The notes beneath the pieces were generated by a model, which had not been told where the DNA came from, ran no database searches, and worked only from the letters and a program-made list of their open reading frames with translations. A stretch of 64,000 bases of DNA from Octopus sinensis (Eukaryota): the NCBI RefSeq assembly GCF_006345805.1, contig NC_043005.1:76136001-76200000 (forward strand), given 5' to 3'. This document shows positions 221-64,000 of this stretch, piece after piece (within the stretch, counting starts at the first letter, position 1; every line of letters starts with the position of its first letter). A program made the position numbers and the translations under genes.

Positions 221-578
221 ATACGATTTAGATTCCTAACTACTCCCACATTTTGCGGTGCTGTTTAACCAAAACCGGGTATCTTATAGTCGTGATTCAT
301 ATCGAGCCCTTCTGGGTATTAGCGCGCGTCTACGATGAGTCTACGATTTAAAAAAAAAATTACCATCAATTTTTCCCATTTTTAATACATTTTTGGCATA
401 TATAAGTGAAGTAACTCTCTAAAAATTTATTATTAAATCTCAGAACGTAAAAAGCTACAGTAACACCCCGCCCTTTGTGGTTAGCCATATTGAGATGGCT
501 ATTATACTTTACATCTCTAAAAATGCTTATATAGTTATTTCCCTTACAAATCCGAGCAACGCCAGGCGATACTGCTAG
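221..578 (+). mobile_element. Non-autonomous Helitron, 5' tip lost
   Basis: Ends in hairpin CCGAGCAACGCCAGG, a spacer and CTAG (575-578) followed by T. It is the reverse complement of the element at 29060-29572 over most of its length. Confidence 0.75.
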
Positions 579-759
579 TATATATATATATATATATATA
601 CACAAAGAGCAATAAAGATTCAAGTTAATTTAAAAAATTACTTGAATATGGTACCTAACTTAGATGCACCAAAAAAAAACTATACTGATTTAACAATACG
701 TAATGTGGGGTGATTATAGCGAGAAGAAGCAACATTCTTGTGCTTCTTTCTCGCGTATA

Positions 760-837
760 TATATATATATATATATTATATATAGATATATATATCATAT
801 ATATATAATATATATTATATACACATATACTGCTAGT

Positions 838-882
<45 letters not shown>

Positions 883-2178: not shown

Positions 2179-2219
2179 ACTAGCACTATGACCCGGCGTT
2201 GCCGGGTTATAGTGCTAGT
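2179..2219. repeat. 41-bp palindrome built from a Helitron 3' terminus
   Basis: ACTAGCACTATGACCCGGC-GTT-GCCGGGTTATAGTGCTAGT: 19-bp stem with one G:T pair and a 3-nt loop. Confidence 0.85.
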
Positions 2220-5734: not shown

Positions 5735-7080
5735 TTGAGCTGAAATTTCATAACATTGAACAGCATGTTATTTTTGTTAGCCCATTTGTATATTTCATTC
5801 AAGTCTTTCTGCAGTTTTATGATGTCCTATGGGTTCCTAGCTGCCTGCGATACTTTTGTGTCGTCAGATTGGCTGACTGTTCCGCGGAGAGCATGTCTGA
5901 GAGGGCCAGCACAAATAGTAGTGGTCTCAGTACAGTTCCCTGTGGAACTCCGCTGAGAATTGGTGTCTCTTCAGAGTGAGCATCATTGGCTACAACTATC
6001 TGACTCCTGCCCTTCAGAACATCATTTAGCCACTCTCCCAATTTCCCCGTAATACCAAGGTTTCGCAGCTTGTAACATATCATGCCATGATCAACCTTGT
6101 CGAAGGCCTTGACAAAGTCGAGGTATATCACGTCTACAGTTGACTGGTTTAGCTGTTGCTTCAATACCCAGTCAAAGTGCTGTAGCAACTGTGTGAGGCT
6201 GCTCCTCCCTGGATGGAAGCCATGTTACGTTTTTGTGAGAAGGTTGTTTTCTTCTAGGAACGTGATCAGCCTTTCTCTGATAATGCGTTCCATTGTCTTG
6301 CTAACATGTGAGGTCAGAGAGATGGGCCTGTAGTTTTTAGCATCTGCTCTGCTCCCTCCTTTATGGACAGGACATATTATACCCTCTTTTAGCATGTTGG
6401 GAAGTTTACCACATGCAAGGAAACTTTGAAAGAGTATCTGCAGTGGCTTTGCAAGAGACTTTGTACATGTCTTTAAGAGAACAGCCGGCAGTCCATCTGG
6501 GCCTGTTGAGAGTTTGATCTCATCCCATCAACGGCCGATATTACATCTTCTTCTATTATGTTGGTGTAATCGATAGTTGCCCCTTTTCCGAAAGGTTTCG
6601 TTACATTGAAAAACTCCTCAGGCTTGTTTATTTGCATATTTTCCAGTGGAGAAGTGAAAACACTTCGGAATTGTTTATTTAGCGCTTCATTTATCTTCCC
6701 CGGATTTGCCGTTAGTGAGCCGTTTTTACCAAATAGCAGCCTTATCTTATAGCGTACTGAGGCAGACTCCTTTGCCAACATGCAGAAGGCTTTAGGATTT
6801 TCAAAAACCTACTGCCCAGGTTTCTCTTTCTTCTCTTTGTTTGTCATGAGAGATTCTATTTCAAAAAGTTCCTCTGTCAGGTGGGATTTCACACTGTCAT
6901 TAAGGTGTTTGCTTAAACGATTCAAGATCTTTATTCTCCGACGCATTAGTATTCTCCTGTTTCGGAGAATGATGTTTTTGTTTGTATTGGCTCTCTTCTC
7001 TGGGACGTATTTAATGCATATGGCTCGCATTATCAACATAAATTTATTGAGTTTCATATCTATGTCTTTCATAGACAGGC
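5735..7080 (-). mobile_element. CR1-group LINE fragment, region upstream of RT plus RT, frameshifted
   Basis: STVDVIYLDFVKAFDKVDHGMICYKL...GKLGEWLNDVLKGRSQIVVAN...SGVPQGTVLRPLLF and NEIYKWANKNNMLFNVMKFQL are CR1/L2-type RT motifs. Confidence 0.9.
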
Positions 7081-9124: not shown

Positions 9125-9535
9125 GCGCAGGAGTGGCTGTGTGGTAAGTAGCTTGCTTACCAACCACATGGTTCCGGATTCAGTCCCACTGTGCGGCCCC
9201 TTGAGTAGGTGTCTTCTACTATAGCCTCGGGCCGACCAAAGCCTTGTGAGTGGATTTGATAGACGGAAACTGAAAGAAGCCCGTCGTATATATGCATATA
9301 TATGTGTGTATGTGTGTGTGTGTGTGTATCTTTGTGTGTCTGTGTTTGTCCCTCCAACATCGCTTGACAACCGATGCTGGTGTGTTTACGTCCCCGTAAC
9401 TTAGCGGTTCGTCAAAAAGTGACCGATAGAATAAGTACTAGGTTACAAGGAATAAGTCATGGGGTCAATTTGCCAGACTAAAGGCGGTGATCCAGCATGG
9501 CCACAGTCAAATGACTTAAACAAGTAAAAGAGAAG
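9125..9535 (+). mobile_element. SINE family B, full length
   Basis: tRNA-like head GCGCAGGAGTGGCTGTGTGGTAAG..GGTTCCGGATTCAGTCCC, internal (TA/TG)n and tail TGACTTAAACAAGTAAAAGAG. Confidence 0.9.
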
Positions 9536-9998: not shown

Positions 9999-10345
9999 CT
10001 AGCTTCTTTCAGCTTCCGTTTACCAAATCCACTCACAAAGCTTTGGTCAGCCGAAAGCTATAGTAGAATGCACTTGCCCTAAGTGCCACACAGTGGGATT
10101 GAACCTGAAACCATGTGGTTGGGAAGCAAGCTTCTTACCACACAATTTTCTTTTATATTTATGCACACACACACACACACACACACACACGACTAGCTTC
10201 TTTCAGTTTCCGCCTACCAAATCCACTCACAAAGCTTTGGTTGGCCCAAGCTATAGTAGAACACACCTGCCCTAAGTGCCACACAGTGGGATTGAACCTG
10301 AAACCATGTGGTTGGGAAGCAAGCTTCTTACCACACAACCTTTCT
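9826..10345 (-). mobile_element. SINE family B with a tandem duplication of its ~190-bp 5' half
   Basis: CACACGACTAGCTTCTTTCAG...CTTCTTACCACACAA occurs at ~9990-10146 and again at ~10185-10340. Confidence 0.85.
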
Positions 10346-10508: not shown

Positions 10509-11280
10509 ATTTCTTTACTACCCACAAGGGGTTAAACACAGAGGGGACGAACAAGGACAGACAAACGGATTAAGTCGATTATATCGACCCCAGTGCGTAA
10601 CTGGTACTTATTTAATCGACCCCGAAAGGATGAAAGGCAAAGTCGACCTCGGCGGAATTTGAACTCAGAACGTAGCGGAAGACGAAATACCAATTTCTTT
10701 ACTACCCACAAGGGGCTAAACACAGAGGGGACGAACAAGGACAGACAAACGGATTAAGTCGATTATATCGACCCCAGTGCGTAACTGGTACTTATTTAAT
10801 CGACCCCGAAAGGATGAAAGGCAAAGTCGACCTCGGCGGAATTTGAACTCAGAACGTAGCGGAAGACGAAATACCAATTTCTTTACTACCCACAAGGGGC
10901 TAAACACAGAGGGGACGAACAAGGACAGACAAACGGATTAAGTCGATTATATCGACCCCAGTGCGTAACTGGTACTTATTTAATCGACCCCGAAAGGATG
11001 AAAGGCAAAGTCGACCTCGGCGGAATTTGAACTCAGAACGTAGCGGAAGACGAAATACCAATTTCTTTACTACCCACAAGGGGCTAAACACAGAGGGGAC
11101 AAACAAGGATAGACAAACGGATTAAGTCGATTATATCGACCCCAATGCGTAACTGGTACTTATTTAATCGACCCCGAAAGGATGAAAGGCAAAGTCGACC
11201 TCGGCGGAATTTGAACTCAGAACGTAGCGGCAGACGAAATACCGCTAAGTATTTCACCCGGGGTGCTAACGTTTCTGCGG
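10509..11280 (-). repeat. Tandem array of SINE family A, 184-bp period, 4 units
   Basis: Units start at 10509, 10693, 10877 and 11061; only the last carries the rest of the tRNA head. Confidence 0.95.
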
Positions 11281-11771
11281 TAAAGTACAGCCATTGGAGT
11301 TGGTTGCAATCCACCTATTCGACTGAGTTCATAGTGCAGTACTTTCTCTTATATTTAGTTGATCATATCGAAATCAGTACTTCTTTTTTTTTTAAAATCT
11401 TGTATTATTCTATTAATATTCTCTGTTCGAACTGATATTTTACAAGATATAAGCAGTGTTAACCGTAAGTACACACACGCACTCGTATAACTATCAAATT
11501 AAGAGTTATCTCCCTTACATTTGTATACTTTTCTATATCGGTCAAGAGATTAAAAGTGCTGTTCAATAGTTAAAATGAGACACGCCTTTGATAATTATTT
11601 GGCCTACATATATTTGTATCTTATAGATAAGATAATGGAAGTCACTCTATTGTATTTTATTCAGGATGTCATCTTTGTTTGGCACTAGTTTCATTAATAG
11701 TTTGTGTCAATTAGCTTGGTTGCAAAGTTGAGCCAAAGCCCTTGCAGAGTTATTTACACACACACACACAC

Positions 11772-16235: not shown

Positions 16236-16732
16236 CAGTGGTTCTCAACCATTTTGTTCCTATAGACCCTCTTGATTCCTGTTTTACTTCGGTTCACATC
16301 CCGTCCCACAAGCCAGTCAATGTTCGAAAACTCCTTTTATATTTTTATAATTGAATATTATTAGAAAGTGTATTAAGGCGGCGAGTTTGGCAGAATCGTA
16401 AGCACGCTGGGTGAAATGCTTAGCAGTATTTCGTCTGCTGGTACTTTCTGAGTTCAAATTCCGCCGAGATCGACTTTGCCTTTCATCCTGCCGGGATCGA
16501 TAAATTAAGCACCAGTGAAATACTGGGGTCGATGTAATCGACTAGTCCTCCTCCCCCAAATTTCAGGCCCTGTGCTTTTAGTAGAAAGGATTATTTGAAA
16601 GTGCATAAAAAATTTGTTAAAATATTTCATTTATTGTAGAAATATAAAAATTATTGCAGATAGATTTTAACAACAAAATCTTACATGGCCCCATCCACCA
16701 AGGATCATATGCATCCCGGTTGAGAATCACTG
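16236..16732. mobile_element. hAT (Charlie/Buster-type) MITE with a nested SINE
   Basis: TIRs CAGTGGTTCTCAACC / GGTTGAGAATCACTG and perfect TSD CACTAAAC (16228-16235, 16733-16740). Same TIR family as 8749-9057. Confidence 0.9.
16374..16596 (+). mobile_element. SINE family A variant nested in the hAT MITE
   Basis: AAGGCGGCGAGTTTGGCAGAATCG..GAGTTCAAATTCCGCCGAG..TCGACTTTGCCTTTCATCC; tail AAAGGATTATT. Confidence 0.85.
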
Positions 16733-20062: not shown

Positions 20063-20416
20063 TCATGAAATATAGCTTACAATCAGGCGGGTCGCACTAC
20101 TAAAAAAATGTTTCAAGGTAATTTTTGTTTGACGCACCATTCAGAAAATCTAGCGGGCCGAAGTTTGTCTTTGACTGCTCTATATAATTGCCTCGACCTG
20201 CCAGAAATTGCTGTCAAACCTCCTTAAAAAATATCAAACCCAGTTATTCTTATTACATTTTTTTTTAAAGAACACATTGGATAATGTGCAAATGGGGATT
20301 AGCTGGGGTGGGCATGGCTAAAATGTCTCAGAGTATATGTTTTCTCTTTCGAGGTTGGCCTGGGACAAACCGAGACGACGATGACAACAGCAACAACAAC
20401 AACAACAACAACAACC

Positions 20417-20650
20417 TTATTTCTTTACTACCCACAAGGGGCTAAACATAGAGGGGACAAACAAGGACAGACAAACGGATTAAGTCGATTACATCGACCC
20501 CCAGTGCGCAACTGGTACTTAATTTATCGACCCCGAAAGGATGAAAGGCAAAGTCAACCTCGGCGGAATTTGAACTCAGAATGTAACGGCAGACGAAATA
20601 CGGCTACGCATTTCGCCCGGCGTGCTAACCATTCTGCCAGCTCGCCGCCA
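20417..20650 (-). mobile_element. SINE family A, full length
   Basis: Reverse complement GGCGGCGAGCTGGCAGAATGGTTAGCACGCCGGGCG..GTAGTAAAGAAATAAGG. Confidence 0.9.
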
Positions 20651-21099
20651 CAACCTGTTTATAAATTGGTAATGCCATTATACGCATATGTAGTCACTCG
20701 ACCAGTTAGAAACACTGAAAAGTAAAAAAAACAAAACAAAAGAAAATACAAAGCAAAAACAAACAAAAAACATATTGGCTTTGAAAATACGGTATGGTCA
20801 TCAATGGTCTGATCGATCACGCTTAGCCTGAAAAACAACGGCAACAAAATCCTATATAACAATCTAGTGGCGTAGCTAGAATGTGTGCGGCACAGAGCAG
20901 CCCTTGTGTCTGCCACTCGAAGGTCCTTATACTAAGTTTATACAGCAGATCTCAAAGTGCCGCCTCCGTAAAAGCGCTGTTAGGACAGACTGCATCATGC
21001 TCCTTCCCAGCTACTTTGCTGACAGCAATATTGAAGGAAGGGATGAAATTCTTGCCGACATTGTCACACGTAAATAATAAGCTGGAACATAGATACATA

Positions 21100-21712: not shown

Positions 21713-21864
21713 GGCGGAGGAGTGGCTGTGTGGTAAGTAGCTTGCTTACGAACCACATGCATGGCACATTGGGCAAGTGTCTTCTACTATAACCTTGGGC
21801 CGACCAAAGCCTTGTGAGTGGATTTGGTAGACGGAAACTGAAAGAAGCCCGTCGTATATATGTA

Positions 21865-21895
<31 letters not shown>

Positions 21896-22134
21896 GTGTG
21901 TGTGTGTATGTGTGTGTATATGTTTGTGTGTCTGTGTTTGCCCCCTCCAACATCGCTTGACAACCGATGCTGGTGTGTTTATGTCCCCGTAATTTAGCGG
22001 TTCAGCAAAAGAGACCGATGAAATACGTACTAGGCTAACAAAGAATAAGTCCTGGGGGCGATTTTCTCGACTAAAGGCGGTGCTCCAGCATGGCCACACT
22101 CACATGACTGAAACAAATAAAAGAGCAAAAGAGA
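21713..22134 (+). mobile_element. SINE family B with a small head deletion
   Basis: GGCGGAGGAGTGGCTGTGTGGTAAG...ACTGAAACAAATAAAAGAG. Confidence 0.9.
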
Positions 22135-22766: not shown

Positions 22767-23144
22767 CATACAGACGCATTCATACATAAGTATGCACACA
22801 CACACACATACCCACATATTTACACATTTAATCTCTGTTCAATTCTGTTGTTGTCTTAAGTCACTGGACAGTGGTCATTGTATTGCACTACATATAAGGG
22901 CTTTTTAAAATCGATTATCGATTACATTCTCACAGTTCATTGTATGGTATTTGTTTTATTGATCTTGTAAGACACAAAAGCAAGGCGATTAAATGTGAAA
23001 GGGTATAACTTGGATACCGTAGTTTCTTACTTTCCTACTCTGAAGAGGGACGTCCGTACAGACTGAAGTAAAAATACACCTTTCATACACGCGCACATAC
23101 ACTCGCAAACATGCACACACATATACCACGGGTATCTGCATAGG

Positions 23145-23372
23145 TAAGGCGGCGAGCTGGCAGAATCGTTAGCACACCGGGCGAAATGCTTAGCGGCATT
23201 TCGTCTGCCGCTACGTTCTGAGTTCAAATTCCGCCGAGGTCGACTTTGCCTTTCATCCTTTCGGAGTCGATTAAATAAGTACCGCACTGGGGTCGATATA
23301 ATCGACTTAATCCGTTTGTCTGTCCTTGTTTGTCCTCTTTGTGTTTAGCCCCTTATGGGTAGTAAAAAAATA
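23145..23372 (+). mobile_element. SINE family A, full length
   Basis: TAAGGCGGCGAGCTGGCAGAATCGTTAGC..GGGTAGTAAAAAAATAGG. Confidence 0.9.
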
Positions 23373-28985: not shown

Positions 28986-29059
28986 GCACACACACACACA
29001 CAAACACAGACACTCACACACAGACACACACACATACATGTAAATACTATATATAAACA

Positions 29060-29572
29060 CTAGCAGTATCGCCCGGCGTTGCTCGGGTTTGTAAGGGAAA
29101 TAACTATATAAGTATTTTTAGAGAGTTACTTCCCTTATAGATGCCAATTCGGGCTTTCTTAGCCATTTCTGTTTTGGTGTCTTCAAGCCATGAAGTCGTT
29201 GTTCTAAAAGAACGCTGGTCTCCTTGACAACGCTTTACGACGTTGATTTCCTTACACTCCCTTCCCCACAGCTTCAGGAGGGAGGGAAGAAGTTTGAGAA
29301 GCAAACAGGTGCAGGTGTGACCATGGACGCCAACTCCGCCGCCATCGACACACGAAAAATTATACATTAAAATGGAATAAAAAATGATGTTAAATTATTT
29401 TTAAAATCGTAGACTCATCGTAGACGCGCGCTAATACTCAGACGGACTCGATATGAATCACGACTATAAGATACCCGAAATTGGTTAAACTGCACCGCAA
29501 AATGTGGGAGTAGTTAGGAATCTAAATCGAAGGGGACAGATACTCACACAACTACAGTTTTATATAGATAGA
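29060..29572 (-). mobile_element. Non-autonomous Helitron, apparently complete, ~513 bp
   Basis: Minus strand starts A|TCTATCTATATAAAAC and ends CCCGAGCAACGCCGGG-CGATACTG-CTAG|T. Confidence 0.85.
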
Positions 29573-34057: not shown

Positions 34058-35514
34058 TTGTATGAATATATAAACACTCACATATACAACACGTATACAT
34101 ATATGTATGTATGTATGTACGTTTGTGCATATATACCTTACTGACGGTTTGACACATTGATTCTTTACAATGCATTATAAAAATCATCACCTGTGACGAG
34201 TTAGTTCCCACGAGGTGTGACCTTCGTTACCATGGCAATACAAAAATTAGTGGCAAAGTTTAAGACAATTTTGTCTGTGCAGTTCTATGAACTGTTTAGG
34301 TGACCACCTATTAGCAAACCATATCTAAATCAAGTCTTTAAGTCTATTGTAGATCTTTACATTTTGTCCAGCTCTCAATGGATTCTTAAATTCATCGCCC
34401 AAATAAATATTCCTAATATTGGTACAAGGTTTGCACATTTTTGTAGAAAGAATAGCTCATCAAATCTAATTTCACTACTTGAAGGCTATTAATTTTAAGT
34501 GGAAAGAATTTTCTATTATGCCAATAATAAACACATGCATTAATTCTGTAAACCTGTAGTAGAGAGGATATGTCATTGAAGAGGTCACTAATATCGACGA
34601 AAGGGCTTTGACAAATCTGATTTTTTCTGTGATTGATTGATTGATTGATTGAATGAACGAACGATTAACCGAATAATCAATTAATTAATTGATTAAACAG
34701 TTAACCAATTGACATTTGGCAAATAAATAACAAAGAAGTGAAATAGAACCAGTGCGTGTGTATATTATTGGTATAATGACCCGCTCAAGCTACAACATAA
34801 TGTTTCACTATACAAGTTCACATCAAGACTGTCGCAAACCAATTAGGTTCCACATTTATATTTCAACGGACACTAAATTTATCAACGCCCTAAAGGTCAT
34901 TGGTGTAGCATAGAATATGCAACGTGTGAGGACCGCACAGGGCTGCAGGGCATTCTATATAGGTGTCATTGTCGTATTCAAAAATACGTCACGGTTTATG
35001 GTAGGGTTCAGTTAATTTGGTTAGTGCAAAGGGCGGTCAAACCACTAGCAACGCCACTGGTAAGGATCAGAACTGCAAACCTCAATAATATTTAGACTCA
35101 GAATGTAAAGGGTAAAGGGGGTTTATGAAATTCTCCAAGGTTCATAATGGGGCGTTCTATCGGTTCTACTGTTATAATCGAAACACCCTCAGCTATAACT
35201 CTTTCTAATTTTGGCAGAAAACCATTATTTTTAAAAAGAGGATAAGTCGATTACATTGGCCTAAATGATCAACTGGTACTTATGTTATCGATCTCGAAAA
35301 GATGTATGGCAGTGTTGCCTTAGACAAAATTTGATGCAGATTCTCTGCTCAACTCTCTCTGTCATGGTCAGTGCGACGATCACAAGCTACACACCTTCTT
35401 TCCAAGCACTGCTGTAAACAGCAGAATTCTTGAGCAACTTTTGAATCCAGAACGTAAAGAACAGGCGGAGAAATCGGTTTCAAATTTTGGCACAAGACCA
35501 GCATTTCGAGGGAG

Positions 35515-40698: not shown

Positions 40699-41114
40699 AG
40701 CGCAGGGCTGGCTGTGTGATTGGTGGCTTGCTTACCAACCACATGGTTCCGGGTTCAGTCCCACTGCGTAGCACCTTGGGCAAGTGTCTTCTACTATAGC
40801 CCCGGGTCGACCAAAGCCTTGTGAGTGGATTTGGTAGACGGAAACTGGAAGAAGTACGTCGTATATATCTATATATATGTATATGTATGTATGTGTGTGT
40901 GTGGGTGTTTGTGGGTCTGTGTTTGTCCCCCCAACATCACTTGACAACCGATGCTGGTGTGTTTACGTCCCCGTAACTTAGCGGTTCGGCAAAAAGAGAC
41001 CGATATAATAAGTACTGGGCTTGCAGAGAATAAGTCCTGGGGTCAATTTGCTCGACTAAAGGCGGTGCTCCAGCATGGCCACAGTCAAATGACTGAAACA
41101 AGTAAAAAGAGTAA
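40699..41114 (+). mobile_element. SINE family B, full length
   Basis: GCGCAGGGCTGGCTGTGTG..GGTTCCGGGTTCAGTCCCACTGCG..ACTGAAACAAGTAAAAAGAG. Confidence 0.9.
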
Positions 41115-44590: not shown

Positions 44591-47540
44591 CTAGCTGACG
44601 TACCCGGTAATTCCCGGAAAAGCTGGGTTTATCCCTTGGTTCCGTTCTCATAATTGTTTCGCTAATCCAATAAAAAACAATACAAAGTATGTAGCCCTCA
44701 AAACGGTTTTTGTGCATTTACAGAGAATGTACCGAACTGTCTTACATATAATCTTGTTTTTAGGAAATCCCAATAAGTTATGAATACCCAAATCGTGAAG
44801 TCAGTTATGTAATAATAAAAATTAGTTACCCGATAGTAAGAATTCAAATAACTTTGAAAAGGCGTTCGCAGAGAATATTAACCTTAGGGGCGCTAGTGTT
44901 GAAATAGGTTTACAATGAATGTAGAAGCAGTTTGACGTTTACTTTTAAAGTAGACATACAAATAAATTTGCATCTAAAATAACATGCAGATTATCACTAG
45001 ATTTACAACATTTACAAATGTTTCGGTTAAATAATAAATACCTGATGATTTGGAGAATTTTATTAAATTTCTAGAGCTTCTTGATAAACCTCATTTTTGG
45101 TCTTTCCTTGTGGGGCATAAATAAAAAAAATGATTAAGATTGTCGACTCTTGAGCATCCCACATAAAGTAGGTCATGGGAGCAAACTGGTTCCGCAAGAT
45201 TCAGAACTACCACATCCACAGACTGACCCTGGGCCTTGTTAAGGCTCATTGCAAAGCTCAGTTTCAACGGGAATTGCTGGCACTTGTACTGGGAAGGCAT
45301 ATCCGAGGGAATAAGTAGAATTCTAGGAATGAATATAGGCTCACCGCTTGCTTTACCAGTCAAAATTATTGTTTCCAAGACTGATAGCATCACCTTCTTT
45401 ATTATAAGTTGTGTGCCATTGCAAAGCTTTGGTGGATAGAGGTTTCGAAGCAGCATAGTTGTGAGATGAGATGTCGGGTTGAGCTAAAATAGCACGGTTT
45501 TTCAGTCAGTTGTGGTCTGTAAACCGATTCCTCAGGTTAGGAAACACCTTATTCATTAGGTCCTTTAAATCAGATACTGCATGTCCAAAAAGCAAGCTTA
45601 CCCGGCCATCCTTCTCGCCAACCGAAGTGCCATTTCCTTCGTCCAACAGTTGCTTTGAAAAAGTTCTGTCTGCATTATCACCACTGGGCTACAGTCTCAT
45701 GCTGGTTGTGAGTCTCAGCTTTTGCACACTGCTCAATAGGTAGGACGACTTTAAGCTGGCGTTTACCTCATCAACTCTTGTCTTCTCTGTAAGCAAGAGA
45801 AGGGTTTGTCTAAAGTTTCCTCCAAGCAACACTGTGGTACCTCCCATGAGCCTAGTGTTGTATCTCAGACCCTGAAGGGCCATGTCAAAAGCTTCAAAGG
45901 AAACCAGATGATCAACCTGCATTCATCCAGAAGTTTGTCTGATGTTGCAGTTTGCCTTCTCTTTCTGGGACAGGTCTAAAGCAAGTTTGAAACAAGAATG
46001 AACTGTGTGGCCACCACTTAGCAGAGTTGTAGCTGTTCAACTTGACGCCACTGCTAGGGTAATGTGTTTCATTTGGCGCAGTTTAGCCAGAAGAAGGTAG
46101 ATGACAAATGTCTTGTCAGTTCCACCTGGAGCATCAAAAAAGAAAAGACCTCCTCTTTCATTTTCCATGCTCGAAATAATGGTCTTATAAACATCCAGTT
46201 GGTCCTCCATCAGTTTGTGTTCGTTATCAGCTATATACGCCATCATTTCCTCAATGTCAGAGATGATTTCTCGCAGGTACTCAATTGCTAGATTGTTTGC
46301 TGCCTGCTCCGGTTGAAGCAGACCAAATGTGGCAATGCCTTGACTTCTCATAGCTTGCGCTCAGGTGTCCAGGTCAAGTAATGCCTCATTGTAAACGACG
46401 TTATTGAACACGGCAATTTCCGCTGAGGTTTGCCTTTAAATCCTTTGTAGGATGTCCTCTGCCATGCTGGTTTTGTGGGTCACCCAAGCCACATATCATC
46501 AACATGATAGAAAATAGCTGGCACAGTTGACTTGGTTCTCTGCTGGTTGCTGTCTCCTCCAGTGTCTGGTCCCAGTAGTCCATGTTTGGCACAGGCTTCT
46601 CTGTAGGTCGTGCAGACTTCCCCATTGTGTCTTCAAAGGTCGGACAGTGTGCAGTAGTAGACGCAGAAAGAAACACTCCTGCTGGTTAGGGTGCACAGTG
46701 TACACTCGTCCAATGGCTCCACTTCTGAAGGCTCCTTGCTTGTGTCTGTTCCATCTATTGTGTCCCAGATATAGTACACAGGAACCTCAACATACAACGG
46801 TGTACAGATCACATTATCATAATTTGAAGAAAGCTGTCAGAGTAGTTTCTGGTGGTTTCAGAACTACGTTTCGAGCATTGTCTTCTGTGAAATATACACG
46901 CTGGCCATTTTCAAGATGTACAGACAGATTCACCCCTGTTGGATGCCGCTCGTAGATTACGAAGCCCTCGTTAGAGGAAATATACCTGCCCAACTTATAT
47001 TGCTGAATTTCATCTGCCTGCCCTTCTATTCAAGTCCCGAAACCGCCATATCTGAGCTCTTATTGATGTATTTACATACATATTTAATACTTTTTAAAGA
47101 GTTGCATGATTCAACATTAAGATGGGCCTGCAATATTTTAGACAGCAATGGGTTGTAGGGCACGATCCACCTGTAGTCAATTCCATCCCTTGACCATTAA
47201 CTTTCAGCTTGTTAGTGTTTAGAGTGATTAAAGGAAAATGAATGAACTATTTCACTTGGCTAGGAAAATGAATGGGTTATTTCCCTTGGCTGTTTAAAGG
47301 AAAGTATATTGGTTATATATGTGGATCCCTTCTAGAGGCCCTAGACATCCAATTATAGATTTTTTATTAAACTTCAATGTGCCTAGTAACAAACTGGATG
47401 TTACTTTAGCATGTTTGCAAAGCTTCACGAAAATTCGTTAACAGGTGTAGACGGCAACTTGACACAAACAGACATACAAACAAACGACTTGCGTTTATCT
47501 CTCTCTCGTTCTCCCTCTCTCTCTCTATATATATATGAAA
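44591..47540 (-). mobile_element. Decayed Helitron with partial RepHel (Rep C-terminal part + PIF1 helicase)
   Basis: WIVPYNPLLS..AHLNVE..SIKYVCKYINK; GRVYTVHP..ECFFLRLLLHTV; FFFDAPGGTDKTF; LLGGNFRQTL; LLRNL.PPKLCNGT; QFPLKLSFAMSLNKAQGQS; ORF end ~45063. 3' end TCCGGGAATTACCGGG-spacer-CTAG|T at 44591. Coding homology stops at ~47180, and the 5' boundary at ~47540 is tentative. Confidence 0.9.
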
Positions 47541-47954
47541 GAAGAGTGTATAATTCTGAATAAATTACAATTATAACAGAGAGGATTGTAAAAACTTCGA
47601 ATATGCAATAGAGGACTAACCTTTTATCCTTATTTCAATTCTGAATTTTATGTCATATCACCTGTCGACAGCTTTTTATTTGTTGGAGAGATATAATATG
47701 AGTGGTTATAGTGGCTTTATAGCGGATTTTACTGCTATTTCTAGACATGTAAGGGTTTTTATAACCTTCTCCGTTATAATTGTGATTTACTCACAATTAT
47801 ACACTCACCCTTCTTCTATGAAAATAAATATTATGATTGCATGTTCTCGCCACTGATATATTTGTAAATAATTTTGAATTGTTTACGATATATTCTTCGC
47901 AATGTACTTTTGCATTCCACTTTTACACACACACACAGACATATAGATATACAA

Positions 47955-48079
47955 TTATGTATGTATGTATGTATGTATGTATGTATGTATGTATGTATGT
48001 ATGTATGTATGTATGTATGTATGTATGTATGTATGTATGTATGTATGTATGTATGTATGTATGTATGTATGTATGTATG

Positions 48080-48133
<54 letters not shown>

Positions 48134-48142
48134 CCTACCTAC

Positions 48143-48210
<68 letters not shown>

Positions 48211-48231
48211 ATCTATATATATCTATCTATC
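47955..48231. repeat. (ATGT)n-(ATCT)n compound microsatellite
   Basis: Direct reading. Confidence 0.95.
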
Positions 48232-49468
48232 TAGACTCTATGTAGACGACGGTGAACAGGTGTGGTCGCCGTTTGTGAGGCACGCTTTCCCGCAGCTCGT
48301 CTCCATGACCGAACTGCAGTCGTGGATCAAAAAGAGGCCGAGGAAGGGCGAATGGCACCGCGAGTGTCGCGTTGCTCTCAAGCAACTCTGCCGTCCTGGG
48401 TCGACCTTGAGTGACTTCAACACAACCAAAGCATTCTATAGGGGATTAGTGGAGGGGAGGTACGACGACGAGCTCGGGGCGAACCTGGACGTCGACGAGG
48501 AGTACCTGACCCGCCTGTTCAGGACGACTTTCGGGCCAGGGCCCATGGACAACTTCCAGAGATCCCTGGCCTGGCAGTGTTACCGAGAAGCGCTACCCGT
48601 TCGGGATAAGCTCTACAGACACGGCTCGAGAGACACGGGGCCGACCTGCCCGAGATGCGGTCAGAGCGACGAAACCATTCTGCACGCACTCGTGCAGTGT
48701 CCAGCAATTTCCGACCTGTGGGCTTGTGTCGAACAACTGCTGTCACATGTGGGACGAGTCGGTTTATCAGCTGAGTCTATCGTCAATATTGTCTCGCCTC
48801 CTTCCTTCAAACGGGAAGGAAGAGCTATTTTCATCATCCTTGTGGCTATGGCGAAAGAATGTATCTGGTGGACGCGTCTGAAAGGATTGGAGACAAACAC
48901 TTTCCTCTCTGGTCAATCTCTCATCAACTTCTTCAAGTACCACTTGAAAAGGAAGTGAGAGTAGAGAGGCAAGTTTTGTCTAGCGAATGTTTTAAAAAAA
49001 GATGGGTGAATGTAGCAAGGATGGCACGTATGAATGACGAAGCCACCTTGAGCATAATCCTATGAACCCAGAAATTGAAAACAGAGGGTTACCCACTTGC
49101 AAACAAATGTGGTAACATATAACAATATTGACCAAGGTTACCGTGGTCTTTTTCGTAGGCTTTTCTTCCCACGGACAAACCTTACTTGCTTTCCCCTTTA
49201 CACCATATATCATAACACTGTGATACACGATCCCTATTGATCGTTCTTTTTTTTCCTCTTCCCCCTTTTTTCCCCTTTTTTCTTCTTTTTTCATTTCTCT
49301 TTTCTTTTGTTCCTTTTCCCTTTCTTTTTTTTGTTCTTTTCTTCCCTTTTACGATCCCTCTTGATCGAAAACCTACGCCCCGCCTTTTTTTTTCATCCCC
49401 CAAAAGAAAAGCTCTACCTTGTAACTTGTCCCATCTGTGTGCAGCCCTGTGTGGCCAATAAAGAAACT
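48232..49468 (+). mobile_element. Tx1/L1-clade LINE 3' fragment with zf-RVT domain and 3' UTR
   Basis: RSLAWQCYREALPVRDKLYRHGSRDTGPTCPRCGQSDETILHALVQCP (RT zinc-binding motif). The frame continues by a shift to ~49025, followed by a T-rich UTR, AATAAA at 49456 and (TATC)n. Confidence 0.85.
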
Positions 49469-50414: not shown

Positions 50415-50573
50415 TAACGGGCTTCTTTCAGTTTCTGTTTACCGAATCTATTCACAATGCGTTGGGCGGCCGGGGTTATAGTAGAAGATACTTACCCAAG
50501 GCTCCAAGTAGTGGGACTGAACCCAGCATCATGTGGTTGGGAAGTAAACTTCTTACCACAGCCACGCCTGCAC
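50415..50573 (-). mobile_element. SINE family B, 5' half
   Basis: Reverse complement GGTGCAGGCGTGGCTGTGGTAAGAAG..GGTTCAGTCCCACTAC. Confidence 0.8.
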
Positions 50574-50639
50574 CCATACATACATGCATACATACATACA
50601 TACATACATACATATGTATATATATATATATATATATAT

Positions 50640-50929
50640 CACGTTATCACGTGACCGACCAGATTATCTGATGTTGCTGCACATCGCTGGTCACAATACG
50701 CTTCAATGACGCGCCATTCAGCTGGCTAAGCGAGCAGGCTAAAGAAGAAGTGAGAGAAAGTTGCATCGAAAGAGTACAGCAGGGATCCCCACCACCCCCT
50801 GCTGGAGCCTCGTGGAGCTCTTACGTGTTTCCGCTCAATAAACACTCACAACGCCCGGCCTGGGGATCGAAACCGCGATCCTCCGACCGCGAGTCCGCTG
50901 CCCTAACCTAACTGGACCATTACGCCTCC
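50640..50929 (-). mobile_element. SINE family C with fourth tail type
   Basis: Head GGAGGCGTAATGGTCCAG..; tail GCCTGCTCGCTTAGCCAGC..TTGTGACCAGCGATGTG is also seen alone at 42895-42992. Confidence 0.85.
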
Positions 50930-60224: not shown

Positions 60225-60642
60225 GGGCGCAGGAGTGGCTGTGTGGTAAGTAGCTTGCTTACCAACCACATGGTTTCGGGTTCAGTCCCACTGCGTGGCA
60301 TCTTGAGCAAGTGTCTTCTACTATAGACTCGGGCCGACCAAAACCTTGTGAATTGATTTGGTAGACGGAAACTGAAAGAAGCCCGTCGTATATATGTATA
60401 TGTGTTTGTGTGTGTGTGTGTGTGTGTGTTTGTGTGTCCATGTTTGTCCCCCCACAACATCGCTTGACAACCGATGCCGGTGTGTTTACCTCCCCGTAAC
60501 TTAGCGGTTCAGCAAAAGAGACCGATAGAATAAGTACTAGGCTTACAAAGAATAAATAAGTCCTGGGGTCGATGTGCTCGACTAAAGGCGGTGCTCCAGC
60601 ATGGCCGCAGTCAAAAATGACTGAAACAAGTAAAAGAGTAAA
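60225..60642 (+). mobile_element. SINE family B, full length
   Basis: GGCGCAGGAGTGGCTGTGTGGTAAGTAGC...ACTGAAACAAGTAAAAGAGTAAAA. Confidence 0.9.
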
Positions 60643-61184
60643 ATAATAATGGGCATTTTTGAGGTCAATGTCCCAAGATGAAACATTTTCTACAAAACCA
60701 TGCGGTGTTGATAACTTGCTTCATTTCAGAAAAGAAACAAAGCAAGATATTGAAGTTAATAAAGAATTCGATGTACTTTGTGAAGAAGCTGGACATCAAG
60801 AGTGTGTAAATATCGTTGGCTGGCAATTTAAGCACTAAAGAGATTATACTTGATTGTAATTTGCGAACTTAAACACGCGTATTGTCTTTAATTGTTGTAA
60901 GTATGTAATTCTTATTGTGATTTAACAAAGCCACTCTAATAAGCATAACTTTTTAATTATCTGCAGATTTGTTTTCATTATAGAAGCTGCATACCTAATT
61001 GACGTATTATTATGGAAACAAATCTCTGTGTGTGTGTGTATAGTTGACTCTTGCTACTCGTTAGCTTTTTTAAACGGCTGGTAACTCTCATTTGCAAAGT
61101 ATTTTTTTTATACTTCAGCATTAAGAAAATGCTTTGATTCCACATGGTATAATAATTCGAACGTAAGGCTGGTAGTTTTGATGG

Positions 61185-62300: not shown

Positions 62301-63460
62301 AGCAGCATTTCTTAGTATATTCCAAGCAATTCCTTTGAATTAGCTTGCCTCAATTTAGCAGGATTACTAGTTATTTCTGTTGTTCACTAGCGCAAGAAAT
62401 AACTAACTCTATTTGACGACACATTATCAAAAGGTTGTATTAACGGGTACACTGGCCTGTGAACTTTTAAGAGATCTGTGAATTTTTAAATAAGTAAATT
62501 AGTGGCTTCGACCGTGTAAGGAACTCTGTTTCTCAGAAGGTAATCACCATCTTGCTCTTGGATGGAGAACCTAAAGCTTCGATCAGTTTAACTCCACTGT
62601 TTTAGCCTTAAACTCCTTTAGCCGAGTCTAATCTGTTATAAGCACTTGAATCATTTTCCTATCCTTCTATCAATCTCGGCGTCTTTGAAAATAGCCAAGT
62701 GTACAACCGTTCTTCTTCTGAGTAGCTATCAAAAAATAAAAGAATAACAACAACGTATCTTGTATCCAGGGTGGGTCATTATGCAAATGATGATAAACAC
62801 ACGCACAAACTCGATTTCACGCCTTTCTTGTTAGTCAGTTGGTTTATTACTTAGCCAATTAACTAAGCGCTTGTGTTTAATTTGTTGATTAAACAATCAA
62901 TCAGTTATTTATCAAAGTTCTTTCGCTTAGTTAGTTGGTTAGGTAACGAACCAATCGACTTACATTAAAAGAGTGAAATCGAACCAGTGCACGCGTTTAT
63001 TATTATTAGCGTTATGAACCTCCTTAGATACAACAAAATTTGTTCCAACACACAAGTTCACGACATGTGTCTTGCAAACCAAATACAAAACTGAAATGAA
63101 GTATCTCTTCATTCTTGATAATTTCTTTTAAATTCAACGTGAATTTTGCTGCTGTTTTTCGCTACCAGACAACGCTTTCTCACTTTAAGTGATGTGTGTT
63201 CGTTACAAACGGGACTCACCCATTCACCGGTGTAAAGGGACTTGGGACTTCAAGAGACAGCAGTGCTTCGACCTCACTCTGTGTCTGTTCTGTCGAAGGT
63301 ATTTTACAGCTAGACCGATGAATCTCAAAAGTGCATCAGCTCTGGTTTATAGGAACCAGCAAACAAGTTGTTTGCTGATTCATGCAGTGGTCGACCAAAC
63401 AGATAAAAATTCATAGGGTGCATGCAGAGCAGCGAGAATCCCAGATATAATATATATATA

Positions 63461-63647
63461 TAAAGTATAGAAGCCATCTTATCATGGCTAACCACATTGG
63501 GGAGGGGGTGTTACTGTAGCTTTATAGCCCCAAGAGATCTTCGTCTCTCTAGAGCCAGCTAGAGACGAAGATCTCTTGGGGCTATAAAGCTACAGTAACA
63601 CCCCTCCCCAATGTGGTTAGCCATGATAAGATGGCTTCTATACTTTA
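63461..63647. repeat. Near-perfect long inverted repeat (88/87-bp arms, 12-nt spacer)
   Basis: 63461-63548 is the reverse complement of 63561-63647 except for one G indel; spacer CTAGAGCCAGCT. Confidence 0.95.
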
Positions 63648-63688
63648 CATTATCGAGCGATTACTGTTTCAATCTCATTCTGAGATTT

Positions 63689-63728
<40 letters not shown>

Positions 63729-63750
63729 GTGTGTGTGTGTGTGTGTGTGT

Positions 63751-63790
<40 letters not shown>

Positions 63791-64000
63791 TTATGTGCTG
63801 TGTTTTATTCCACTGAAGAGGCAAAGCATTTCTTATGCAAGGCCAGAAACCTAACAATGGGCTACATGGAAATAATCATTTACCAGGAATCTTTATCAAT
63901 CTTTGGAAACCCCCTTTCTCAATGCATAAAAGAGAATTGGAAACGATTCTTAGACTATTGTTTTATAATCTGGAATGAAACCACAGATAAACTCCTAAAA

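What the first reader, a model, noticed from the sequence alone, without database searches (positions are those of the whole stretch)
63461..63647. 87-bp near-perfect hairpin made by fold-back duplication of a repeat fragment
Seen: two arms identical as reverse complements apart from one G in a G-run, with a 12-nt spacer whose left junction sits on the palindrome CTCTAGAG. The arm sequence (AAAGCTACAGTAACACCCC..GTGGTTAGCCAT..GATGGCT..ATACTTTAC) also occurs as a single diverged copy at ~450-512, so it is repeat-derived. Inference: a recent template-switch inversion. If transcribed on either strand it would give ~87 bp of dsRNA, a strong ADAR or Dicer (hairpin siRNA) substrate. Established: coleoid cephalopods edit RNA heavily at dsRNA.
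Basis: partly seen in the sequence, partly recalled or inferred. Interest (0 to 1): 0.75.

Follow-up and report, generated by a model that had tools for sequence, protein, structure and literature searches.

The report
Inverted retroelement ends forming perfect hairpin
The near-perfect 190-base palindrome is really in the sequence, but it is most likely an ordinary by-product of how a Penelope-like jumping gene inserts (two copies of its tail end laid down head to head) and not a special RNA gene; nothing here shows that it is transcribed.

Summary
Arms 63461-63548 and 63561-63647 are reverse complements apart from one extra G, with a 12-nt spacer and CTCTAGAG at 63547-63554. The predicted RNA stem is -168 kcal/mol (z = -24.6).

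The interpretation needs revising. The third copy (core 448-514, 85% identical) lies in an 87-bp insertion (427-513). That insertion is flanked by a perfect 11-bp target-site duplication, and a paralogous repeat at 29114-29124 keeps the empty site. The arm is therefore a discrete, TSD-making mobile unit.

Both outer ends of the palindrome fall exactly on that unit's terminus (...CTTTACA[T]). The right arm is followed by 38 nt whose last 11 nt recur, inverted, in the solo insertion (p about 0.003). The locus sits in a (TA)n tract. A reverse-transcriptase fragment whose full-length homologues carry RT plus GIY-YIG (Penelope-like) starts at 63848, in the same orientation.

Head-to-head 5'-truncated copies, a junction palindrome, a one-sided 30-40-bp tail and a microsatellite bias are the published signature of Penelope-like insertions. 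I give that reading about 0.5. The rivals are a later replication template switch (0.2), a MITE (0.1) and an assembly artefact (0.07).

No copies outside the window could be retrieved. Transcription, editing and small RNAs are untested. Interest is low.

The parts
63443..63460 (.). (TA)n-like tract abutting the left arm. Putative left half of the microsatellite target.
   Evidence: Sequence; direct-repeat family D2.
63461..63548 (-). Left arm: inverted copy of the unit. Its sense is on the minus strand and its 3' terminus points outward to the left. It carries both derived states: the extra G and TTTATAT in place of TTTACAT.
63547..63554 (.). 8-bp palindrome CTCTAGAG at the inverted junction. 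CTAG also recurs at 63559-63562 and AGCT at 63557-63560.
   Evidence: unique in the window.
63549..63560 (.). 12-nt spacer CTAGAGCCAGCT. With a 2-nt CT/AG slip the effective loop is 6 nt.
63561..63650 (+). Right arm: direct copy of the unit, made of 22-25 nt of inner sequence plus the 64-66-nt conserved core, ending ...CTTTACA(T). It holds the small stem-loop AGCCAT-GATAAG-ATGGCT and an ATG at 63611.
63651..63687 (+). Putative 'tail': about 38 nt present at one outer end only. It ends in TTCTGAGATTT (63678-63688), whose reverse complement is in the solo insertion at 435-445.
   Evidence: empirical p about 0.003; the 11-mer is unique to these two places.
63688..63795 (.). Compound microsatellite (TA)n(TG)n(TA)n. 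Putative right half of the target, or a junction tract.
63848..64000 (+). Penelope-like reverse-transcriptase fragment (motif B-C region, NLTMGYME...WKRFLDYCFIIW), cut by the window end. It is in the same orientation and reading frame as the ATG at 63611.
   Evidence: 60 homologues; homologues are RVT_1 plus C-terminal GIY-YIG; tblastn E = 7.7e-11; HMM E = 5e-17; frame.
427..513 (+). Solo 87-bp insertion of the same unit: a 23-nt non-core stub (427-449) plus the core (about 448-513).
416..426 (.). Target-site duplication TCTCTAAAAAT, left copy.
514..524 (.). Target-site duplication TCTCTAAAAAT, right copy.
29114..29124 (-). Empty site: a single TCTCTAAAAAT in the paralogous copy of the host repeat ('family X', 29038-29529).

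Best explanation
The palindrome is a head-to-head pair of heavily 5'-truncated copies of the 3' end of a short, TSD-forming retroelement. Both copies were laid down in a single retrotransposition event of the Penelope-like (PLE) type, into a (TA)n microsatellite.

Shown:
- The arm is a discrete mobile unit with a defined terminus.
- Both arms point that terminus outward.
- The junction holds short palindromes.
- A PLE RT fragment lies 200 bp away in the same orientation.

Inferred:
- The element's enzyme nicked both DNA strands. Each 3'-OH then primed cDNA synthesis on the element RNA, one at a proximal start site (giving ...CTTTACAT) and one at a distal start site 38 nt further on (giving the one-sided 'tail').
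- Alternatively, the first cDNA snapped back at CTAG/CTCTAGAG and copied itself.
- The two cDNAs were joined at the short palindrome, giving two identical 88-nt arms.

On this reading the hairpin has no selected function and is a structural by-product. If the locus is transcribed it would fold into about 87 bp of dsRNA, but that is not shown.
For: 1. The solo copy is an 87-bp insertion between perfect 11-bp direct repeats, and a paralogue keeps the empty site.
2. Homology among the solo copy, the right arm and the inverted left arm ends at the same nucleotide...CTTTA[C/T]A(T). Three unrelated flanks follow.
3. Both differences between the arms are derived in the left arm, so the right arm looks like the standard copy.
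4. The 38 nt after the right arm end in an 11-mer found elsewhere in the window only once: inverted, in the non-core stub of the solo insertion (p about 0.001-0.003). This suggests that the 38 nt are element-derived, and that the solo copy is itself a head-to-head product.
5. The RT fragment at 63848-64000 has homologues with RVT_1 plus C-terminal GIY-YIG, the canonical PLE architecture.
6. [quoted passage not shown] Also palindromes at the head-to-head junction, TSDs of 8-10 bp or none, and a pLTR that includes the first 12 aa of the ORF, or 22 aa with the tail (PMC3846280). A purified PLE protein nicks and extends both strands and starts RT at two sites that delimit the tail (PMC11167929).
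7. An ATG at 63611 gives 13 codons to the proximal end and about 25 to the distal end. The six arm-versus-solo differences in those 39 nt avoid second codon positions.
8. PLEs are abundant and recently active in Octopus (PMC13282606).
Against: - No copy of the unit could be shown at the 3' end of a full PLE, so the link between arms and PLE rests on anatomy and adjacency.
- Only two independent copies of the unit exist in the data.
- No clean TSD flanks the hairpin, because both flanks are (TA)n.
- No hammerhead ribozyme motif was detected, although the arms may be too short to hold one and some PLE clades lack it.
- The tail-stub match is short. The tail contains its own small hairpin (AATCTCA/TGAGATT), so the orientation of the match is ambiguous. 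The match was also found after many looks at the data.
- The RT fragment may belong to an older PLE copy that the hairpin merely landed in or beside. A weak, non-significant motif-A match lies upstream at 63164-63253.
- Zero substitutions between the arms could also reflect gene conversion.
Confidence: 0.5

Rival explanations
1. Post-insertion fold-back or replication template switch. On this view a single retroposed unit, the right arm, already lay next to a (TA)n tract. A stalled nascent strand switched to the complementary template, copied the unit backwards, and switched back at CT/CTAG microhomology.
For: Both junctions sit on microhomology: (TA)n against TACAT on the left, and CTCT/CTAG at the centre. 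The arms are identical, so the event is recent. The left arm carries both derived states. Events of this size are within the known range of template-switch mutations (my own knowledge).
Against: The copy would have to stop within 1-3 nt of the element's own terminus by chance. I estimate that at roughly 0.1-0.25 even allowing for the need for AT-rich microhomology. This model explains neither the inverted tail stub inside the TSD-bounded solo copy nor the adjacent PLE RT fragment.
Confidence: 0.2
2. Miniature inverted-repeat transposable element (MITE). On this view the whole 190-bp palindrome is a non-autonomous DNA transposon whose long terminal inverted repeats make up nearly the entire element.
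For: Near-palindromic elements of about 200-300 bp are common. The window holds older ones at 62760-63040 and 47534-47818. MITE and Mutator families are reported as recently active in Octopus.
Against: A single arm is found on its own, without any inverted partner, between 11-bp TSDs. Cut-and-paste transposition does not produce that. No TSD of fixed length flanks the palindrome; only an ambiguous TA is possible. The one-sided 38-nt extension is not expected for a MITE.
Confidence: 0.1
3. Assembly or library artefact: a fold-back chimera or mis-collapsed repeat, so that the real locus has only one arm.
For: The only differences between the arms are homopolymer or dinucleotide-length differences, which are typical of long-read consensus error. 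The PLE literature warns that tandem/inverted PLE structures trouble assemblies. No reads were available.
Against: The palindrome is short and internal, with different unique sequence on each side. The centre does not match the adapter sequences I recalled from memory (SMRTbell, ONT, Illumina, Nextera). Read-scale fold-back chimeras give kb-scale palindromes at contig ends. The outer boundaries coincide with a biological terminus.
Confidence: 0.07
4. Two independent insertions of the same active unit that happened to land head to head, 12 nt apart.
For: Both arms have complete outward termini. Retroelements with a microsatellite preference can re-hit the same tract.
Against: Both copies would have to be truncated at the same inner position (within 2 nt) and be free of substitutions. 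No TSD brackets either arm separately.
Confidence: 0.03

Closest known systems
Penelope-like element (PLE) insertion structures: inverted or direct pseudo-LTRs with an optional tail
   Same: Head-to-head arrangement of 5'-truncated copies with their 3' ends outward. A short palindrome at the inverted junction. A 30-40-bp extension at one outer end only (here 38 nt). TSD of about 8-11 bp on the solo copy. A microsatellite context. An ATG about 13 codons before the proximal end, as in Adineta vaga pLTRs. A PLE-type RT fragment next door.
   Different: Extremely short: 88-nt arms with no ORF between them. No hammerhead motif detected. Membership of the arms in a PLE family is not demonstrated. 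The neighbouring RT fragment is separated from the arms by a compound microsatellite and may be unrelated.
L1 twin priming (5' inversion) and RT snap-back (self-primed) synthesis
   Same: Inversion generated during target-primed reverse transcription, with the junction resolved by microhomology.
   Different: Classical twin priming inverts the upstream part of the RNA and places the RNA's 5' end at the junction. It does not duplicate the same 3' segment on both sides. Here both outer ends are the same 3' terminus.
Short template-switch mutations and fold-back inverted duplications
   Same: A local inverted duplication of tens of bp with a short spacer and microhomology at the junctions, creating a perfect hairpin.
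   Different: Such events have arbitrary end points. Here the end point is the element's terminus.
MITEs and foldback elements
   Same: An element about 200 bp long that is almost entirely a palindrome.
   Different: A solo arm moves on its own with TSDs, and no TSD is seen around the palindrome.
Drosophila hpRNA loci, and inverted-repeat dsRNA substrates of ADAR such as inverted Alu pairs
   Same: If transcribed, it would form a long perfect intramolecular duplex.
   Different: No evidence of transcription, processing or editing. The stem is far longer and more perfect than animal miRNA precursors. Rfam hits are all below the gathering scores.

Membership tests
Penelope-like element insertion | Element encodes RT fused to a GIY-YIG endonuclease | tested here: inconclusive
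   An RT fragment at 63848-64000 has full-length homologues with RVT_1 plus C-terminal GIY-YIG. The window ends before any endonuclease domain, and the fragment is not shown to belong to the same element as the arms.
Penelope-like element insertion | [quoted passage not shown] | tested here: met
   Both arms have the unit's terminus outward, and CTCTAGAG, CTAG and AGCT lie at the junction. The criterion is taken from PMC8557442 and PMC3846280.
Penelope-like element insertion | Optional 30-40-bp tail at one 3' end (two RT start sites) | tested here: inconclusive
   A 38-nt extension follows the right arm only. Its terminal 11-mer recurs, inverted, in the solo insertion (p about 0.003). With only two loci this is suggestive, not proven.
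Penelope-like element insertion | Target-site duplication of variable short length (or none) | tested here: met
   A perfect 11-bp TSD flanks the solo copy, with an empty site in a paralogue. At the hairpin both flanks are (TA)n, so a TSD can be neither shown nor excluded.
Penelope-like element insertion | Hammerhead ribozyme motif in the pLTR (canonical clades) | tested here: not met
   No Hammerhead family appears among the Rfam matches, even at E up to 10. The arms may be too short to include one, and Naiad-type PLEs lack it.
Penelope-like element insertion | The unit is the 3' end (pLTR) of a full-length PLE in the same genome | not testable with these tools
   No eukaryotic genome collection was searchable by DNA. 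Scans of the metagenome, genome and viral collections found nothing.
MITE (DNA transposon derivative) | Terminal inverted repeats flanked by a TSD of superfamily-specific length | tested here: not met
   Inverted repeats are present, but no TSD flanks 63458-63650 other than an ambiguous TA.
MITE (DNA transposon derivative) | Mobilised only as the complete TIR-to-TIR unit | tested here: not met
   A single arm core sits alone between 11-bp TSDs at 427-513.
Template-switch or fold-back inverted duplication | The ancestral or allelic state has one copy, and the derived state adds the inverted copy in place | not testable with these tools
   No orthologous or allelic sequence could be retrieved.
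miRNA or hpRNA gene | Match to a curated RNA family, or evidence of expression and processing | tested here: not met
   No Rfam match at gathering score. The best sub-threshold hits, to miRNA-precursor models (for example MIR844 at 50.6 bits against a gathering score of 70), reflect hairpin shape only. Expression is not testable.
tRNA-derived SINE | tRNA-like head with A and B boxes | tested here: not met
   ARAGORN finds no tRNA in the window, and there is no tRNA match in Rfam.

The most novel reading that the evidence does not exclude
The hairpin is transcribed, for example inside an intron or from the neighbouring Penelope-like element. It then acts as a long hairpin RNA: either a hyper-edited ADAR substrate or a source of small RNAs that silence its own retroelement family. 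That would make head-to-head Penelope-type insertions a built-in generator of self-targeting dsRNA in octopus genomes.
Probability: 0.05. Interest if true: 0.55.

Novelty: new member of a known kind. Interest (0 to 1): 0.2.

Why it matters
In itself this matters little. It is one more transposable-element-derived inverted repeat in a genome that is about two-thirds repeats.

It has two modest uses:
- It is a clean, minimal example (228 bp) of the head-to-head-plus-tail architecture that Penelope-like elements leave behind. That architecture is poorly annotated by standard pipelines and easily mistaken for a MITE, a template-switch mutation or an assembly error.
- If such structures are frequent and transcribed, they would add to the pool of perfect dsRNA available to ADAR and small-RNA pathways in cephalopods. 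That is testable genome-wide with existing RNA-seq data.

Tried and rejected
- **DNA scans for outside copies:** two metagenome patterns, genome contigs and viral contigs gave 0 hits.
- **Peptide searches:** peptides translated from the arm plus right flank and from the solo copy in its host repeat found no candidates. An exact look-up of the 75-aa ORF left of the hairpin was not on record.
- **Full-text search of papers for the repeat's k-mers:** nothing.
- **Related octopod DNA:** an Argonauta hians locus of 20 kb and Logan/ENA contigs contain no copy of the unit.
- **Known RNA families:** Rfam at gathering score and at E up to 10, plus ARAGORN, found no family membership.
- **RT fragment continuing upstream of the hairpin:** a motif-A-like piece at 63164-63253 is collinear but not significant (E = 8.7 by tblastn, 0.83 by HMM). 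An apparent 'VFYS' duplication across the hairpin is not supported at the nucleotide level.
- **TSD around the palindrome:** none beyond (TA)n. The weak resemblance of 63434-63460 to 63670-63700 (family D2) is too diverged to be a TSD of so young an event.
- **Adapter or vector origin of the centre** (BglII, XbaI and BsmBI sites; SMRTbell, ONT, Illumina and Nextera adapters, compared from memory): no match. The paired sites follow automatically from the palindrome.
- **Sense orientation with TGTAAAG as the 5' end:** rejected because it puts the 3' ends at the centre, which target-primed reverse transcription cannot produce.

Full report
**1. The observation**

The left arm 63461-63548 and the right arm 63561-63647 are exact reverse complements except for one extra G in the left arm's G-run. 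The spacer is CTAGAGCCAGCT, and CTCTAGAG lies at 63547-63554.

- Allowing one A/G mismatch, the symmetry reaches 63458-63650.
- Allowing a 2-nt CT/AG slip, it also runs inward through CTAG, leaving a 6-nt loop.
- As RNA the region folds at -168 kcal/mol (shuffles -56 +/- 4.6, z = -24.6). As DNA it folds at -106 kcal/mol (z = -30.8).
- It is the only long short-spacer palindrome in the 64 kb.
- The diverged third copy is real: 448-514, 85% identical over 68 nt, with no further copies in the window.

**2. What kind of genome**

The window is AT-rich (30-41% G+C) and full of microsatellites. It carries LINE, Helitron-like and other transposon fragments.

- A LINE ORF's best named relative is from the octopod Argonauta hians (58% identity).
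- Other relatives sit on Logan and ENA contigs.

An octopod origin is therefore well supported.

**3. The arm is a discrete mobile unit**

The third copy lies inside a copy of another repeat ('family X', 224-600). A paralogous X copy lies at 29038-29529 on the other strand.

- Aligning the two X copies shows that 427-513 (87 bp) is present only in the first.
- There it is bracketed by a perfect 11-bp direct repeat, TCTCTAAAAAT (416-426 and 514-524).
- That 11-mer occurs once at the corresponding place in the second copy (29114-29124).

This is a classical filled site against an empty site with a target-site duplication. The insertion has no terminal inverted repeats. The unit therefore behaves like a retroposon, not like the end of a cut-and-paste transposon.

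**4. Where the homology ends**

A three-way alignment of the solo copy, the right arm and the reverse-complemented left arm shows a shared core of about 64-66 nt.

- The core runs AAAGCTACAGTAACACCCC...TGTGGTTAGCCAT...GATGGCT..TATACTTTACA(T).
- It stops at the same nucleotide in all three. Three unrelated sequences follow: the TSD, TATCGAGCG..., and the (TA)n tract.
- The outer limits of the palindrome therefore coincide, to within one nucleotide, with the unit's own terminus.
- The inner 22-25 nt of each arm and the spacer have no counterpart in the solo copy.
- At both places where the arms differ, the right arm agrees with the solo copy. The left arm is therefore the derived one.

An in-place replication template switch has no reason to end at the element's terminus. 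The need for AT-rich microhomology next to a (TA)n tract makes the coincidence less extreme than it first looks.

**5. The flanks**

The left arm abuts a (TA)n tract. The right arm is followed by 38 nt of unique sequence (63651-63687) and then a compound (TA)n(TG)n(TA)n microsatellite (63688-63795).

- The last 11 nt of the 38-nt segment, TTCTGAGATTT, occur elsewhere in the window only once. That occurrence is the reverse complement at 435-445, inside the 23-nt non-core part of the solo insertion, again followed by an A/T-rich run.
- Shuffling gives p about 0.001. Sampling real 23-mers from the window gives p about 0.003.
- The natural reading is that the 38 nt belong to the element, and that the solo insertion is itself a miniature head-to-head product: an inverted stub of the distal end plus a direct, tail-less core.
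- I treat this as suggestive only. The match is short, the 38-nt segment has its own 7-bp hairpin that blurs orientation, and I found the match after many comparisons.

**6. A Penelope-like neighbour**

The stop-free frame 63599-64000 ends in ...NLTMGYMEIIIYQESLSIFGNPLSQCIKENWKRFLDYCFIIWNETTDKLLK.

- A full HMMER scan of 1.84 billion representatives found 60 relatives (best E = 4e-10).
- The long relatives carry RVT_1 followed by a C-terminal GIY-YIG domain, which is the canonical architecture of endonuclease-positive Penelope-like elements.
- tblastn places the homology at 63848-64000 (E = 7.7e-11). A small RT profile gives E = 5e-17.
- A 77%-identical Logan contig shows the homology starting abruptly at about 63847, just after the microsatellite.
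- A possible upstream continuation at 63164-63253 is collinear but not significant.

I therefore cannot tell whether the RT fragment is a 5'-truncated copy that follows the arms or part of an older copy that the hairpin landed in.

**7. Comparison with the literature**

- Craig et al. 2021 (PMC8557442) describe PLE insertions as heavily 5'-truncated. [quoted passage not shown]
- Arkhipova et al. [quoted passage not shown]
- Frangieh et al. 2024 (PMC11167929) show that a purified PLE protein nicks and extends both DNA strands. It also initiates reverse transcription at two internal sites whose spacing is the tail.
- PLEs are abundant and recently active in Octopus vulgaris (PMC13282606).

The locus matches point by point:
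- The 3' termini of both copies face outward.
- There is a junction palindrome.
- There is a 38-nt one-sided extension.
- The solo copy has an 11-bp TSD.
- The target is a (TA)n tract.
- An ATG at 63611 gives 13 codons to the proximal end and about 25 to the distal end.
- In those 39 nt the six differences between arm and solo copy fall only on first and third codon positions (MWLAMIRWLLYFT against LWLAILRWLLYFT). This is a weak hint of past coding constraint.

**8. Mechanism I commit to (confidence about 0.5)**

I propose one retrotransposition event into a (TA)n tract in which both nicked strands primed cDNA on the element's RNA. One strand primed at the proximal start site and the other at the distal start site. 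Alternatively, the first cDNA snapped back at CTAG/CTCTAGAG.

The two cDNAs have the same sense, so they can pair only at a self-complementary sequence. They were joined at the short palindrome. This explains why the arms are equally long and meet at CTAG-type palindromes.

- Shown: unit identity, termini, TSD, junction palindromes and the PLE RT neighbour.
- Inferred: that the unit is a PLE 3' end, and the priming steps.

**9. Age**

There is no substitution in 87 aligned nt. I used the rate implied by the Octopus vulgaris repeat paper (JC 0.09 at about 25 My). That gives a 95% upper bound of roughly 5 My for independent decay of the arms. This is an inference, and gene conversion between the arms would bias it. 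The solo copy differs by 15%, so it belongs to a much older or different subfamily.

**10. Rivals**

- A later replication template switch (0.2) fits the microhomologies. It needs the end-point coincidence and leaves the tail stub and the PLE neighbour unexplained.
- A MITE (0.1) fits the shape, and older palindromic elements do exist in the window. It is contradicted by the solo arm with its own TSD and by the lack of a TSD around the palindrome.
- An assembly artefact (0.07) cannot be excluded without reads. However, the structure is short, internal and differently flanked, and it ends at a biological terminus.
- Two independent insertions (0.03) would need identical truncation points.

**11. 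Function**

Nothing here shows transcription. Rfam gives no match at gathering score. In permissive mode the best matches are sub-threshold hits to miRNA-precursor models, as any long hairpin would give.

Whether ADAR or a Dicer or Piwi pathway sees it needs RNA-seq and small-RNA-seq.

**12. Limits**

No eukaryotic genome could be searched by DNA. All three protein word searches and the four collection scans that could have found outside copies came back empty. The family is therefore known from two loci in one 64-kb window. The window ends 150 nt into the RT fragment, so the element downstream cannot be followed.

**13. Verdict**

It is more probably an insertion-time product of a Penelope-like retroelement than a replication template switch. 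It is a new member of a known kind, and its interest is low (0.2).

Noticed in passing
window 224-600 (+), 29038-29529 (-), 827-858 (+): 'Family X': a repeat of about 370 bp that is 90% identical between its two copies. It ends in ...GATACTGCTAGT followed by a (TA)n tail. A 32-bp 3'-terminal fragment lies at 827-858, which looks like a retroposon with heavily 5'-truncated copies. The copy at 29 kb has an extra 218 bp (29148-29365) that the first copy lacks.
   Followed up: partly
window 63599-64000 (+): A single stop-free frame links three things: the ATG inside the right arm (63611), the 38-nt tail, and the Penelope-like RT fragment. It passes through the microsatellites (read as YIYI.../CVCV...). 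Two-thirds or more of this could be chance, because microsatellite frames have no stops.
   Followed up: partly
window 62760-63040: An older, decayed palindrome of about 280 bp (arms about 110 nt, about 75-80% complementary, MFE -118 kcal/mol) lies only about 420 bp upstream of the hairpin. One arm resembles 34732-34821. It could be a MITE or an old head-to-head insertion.
   Followed up: partly
window 47534-47818: A MITE-like element of about 285 bp with about 52-nt terminal inverted repeats (86.5% complementary, 159 nt apart).
   Followed up: no
window 2179-2219: A small near-perfect hairpin, CACTAGCACTAT.ACCCGGC-GTT-GCCGGGT.ATAGTGCTAGT, with a 19-bp stem. Its origin is unknown.
   Followed up: no
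window 45094-46360 (-): PIF1-like helicase and UvrD_C_2 fragments, which suggest a decayed Helitron-type element.
   Followed up: no
window 5820-6808 (-), 47837-48958 (+): LINE fragments: an RVT_1 domain at 5820-6224, and a zf-RVT C-terminal ORF at 48308-48955. The latter is 82% identical at the DNA level to an ENA metagenome contig (ERZ4233750) and 58% identical in protein to Argonauta hians.
   Followed up: partly
window 9160-9411, 10003-10272, 21749-22099, 40735-40962, 50418-50651, 60262-60720: At least six copies, on both strands, of a SINE-like repeat whose translation reads ...[36 protein letters not shown] second recurrent family (...RKDERQSRPRRNLNSERSGRRNTAKHF...) lies at 11088-11432, 16320-16541, 20303-20722 and 23030-23344. 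Oppositely oriented pairs of these families account for the long-range inverted repeats found.
   Followed up: no
L007 (Logan SRR11869391 contig, 1057 bp): The related Penelope-like RT copy on this contig also begins abruptly near RT motif B (profile position about 182, against about 195 in the window). Upstream of that point it has non-RT sequence. This may be a shared truncated subfamily or coincidence.
   Followed up: partly
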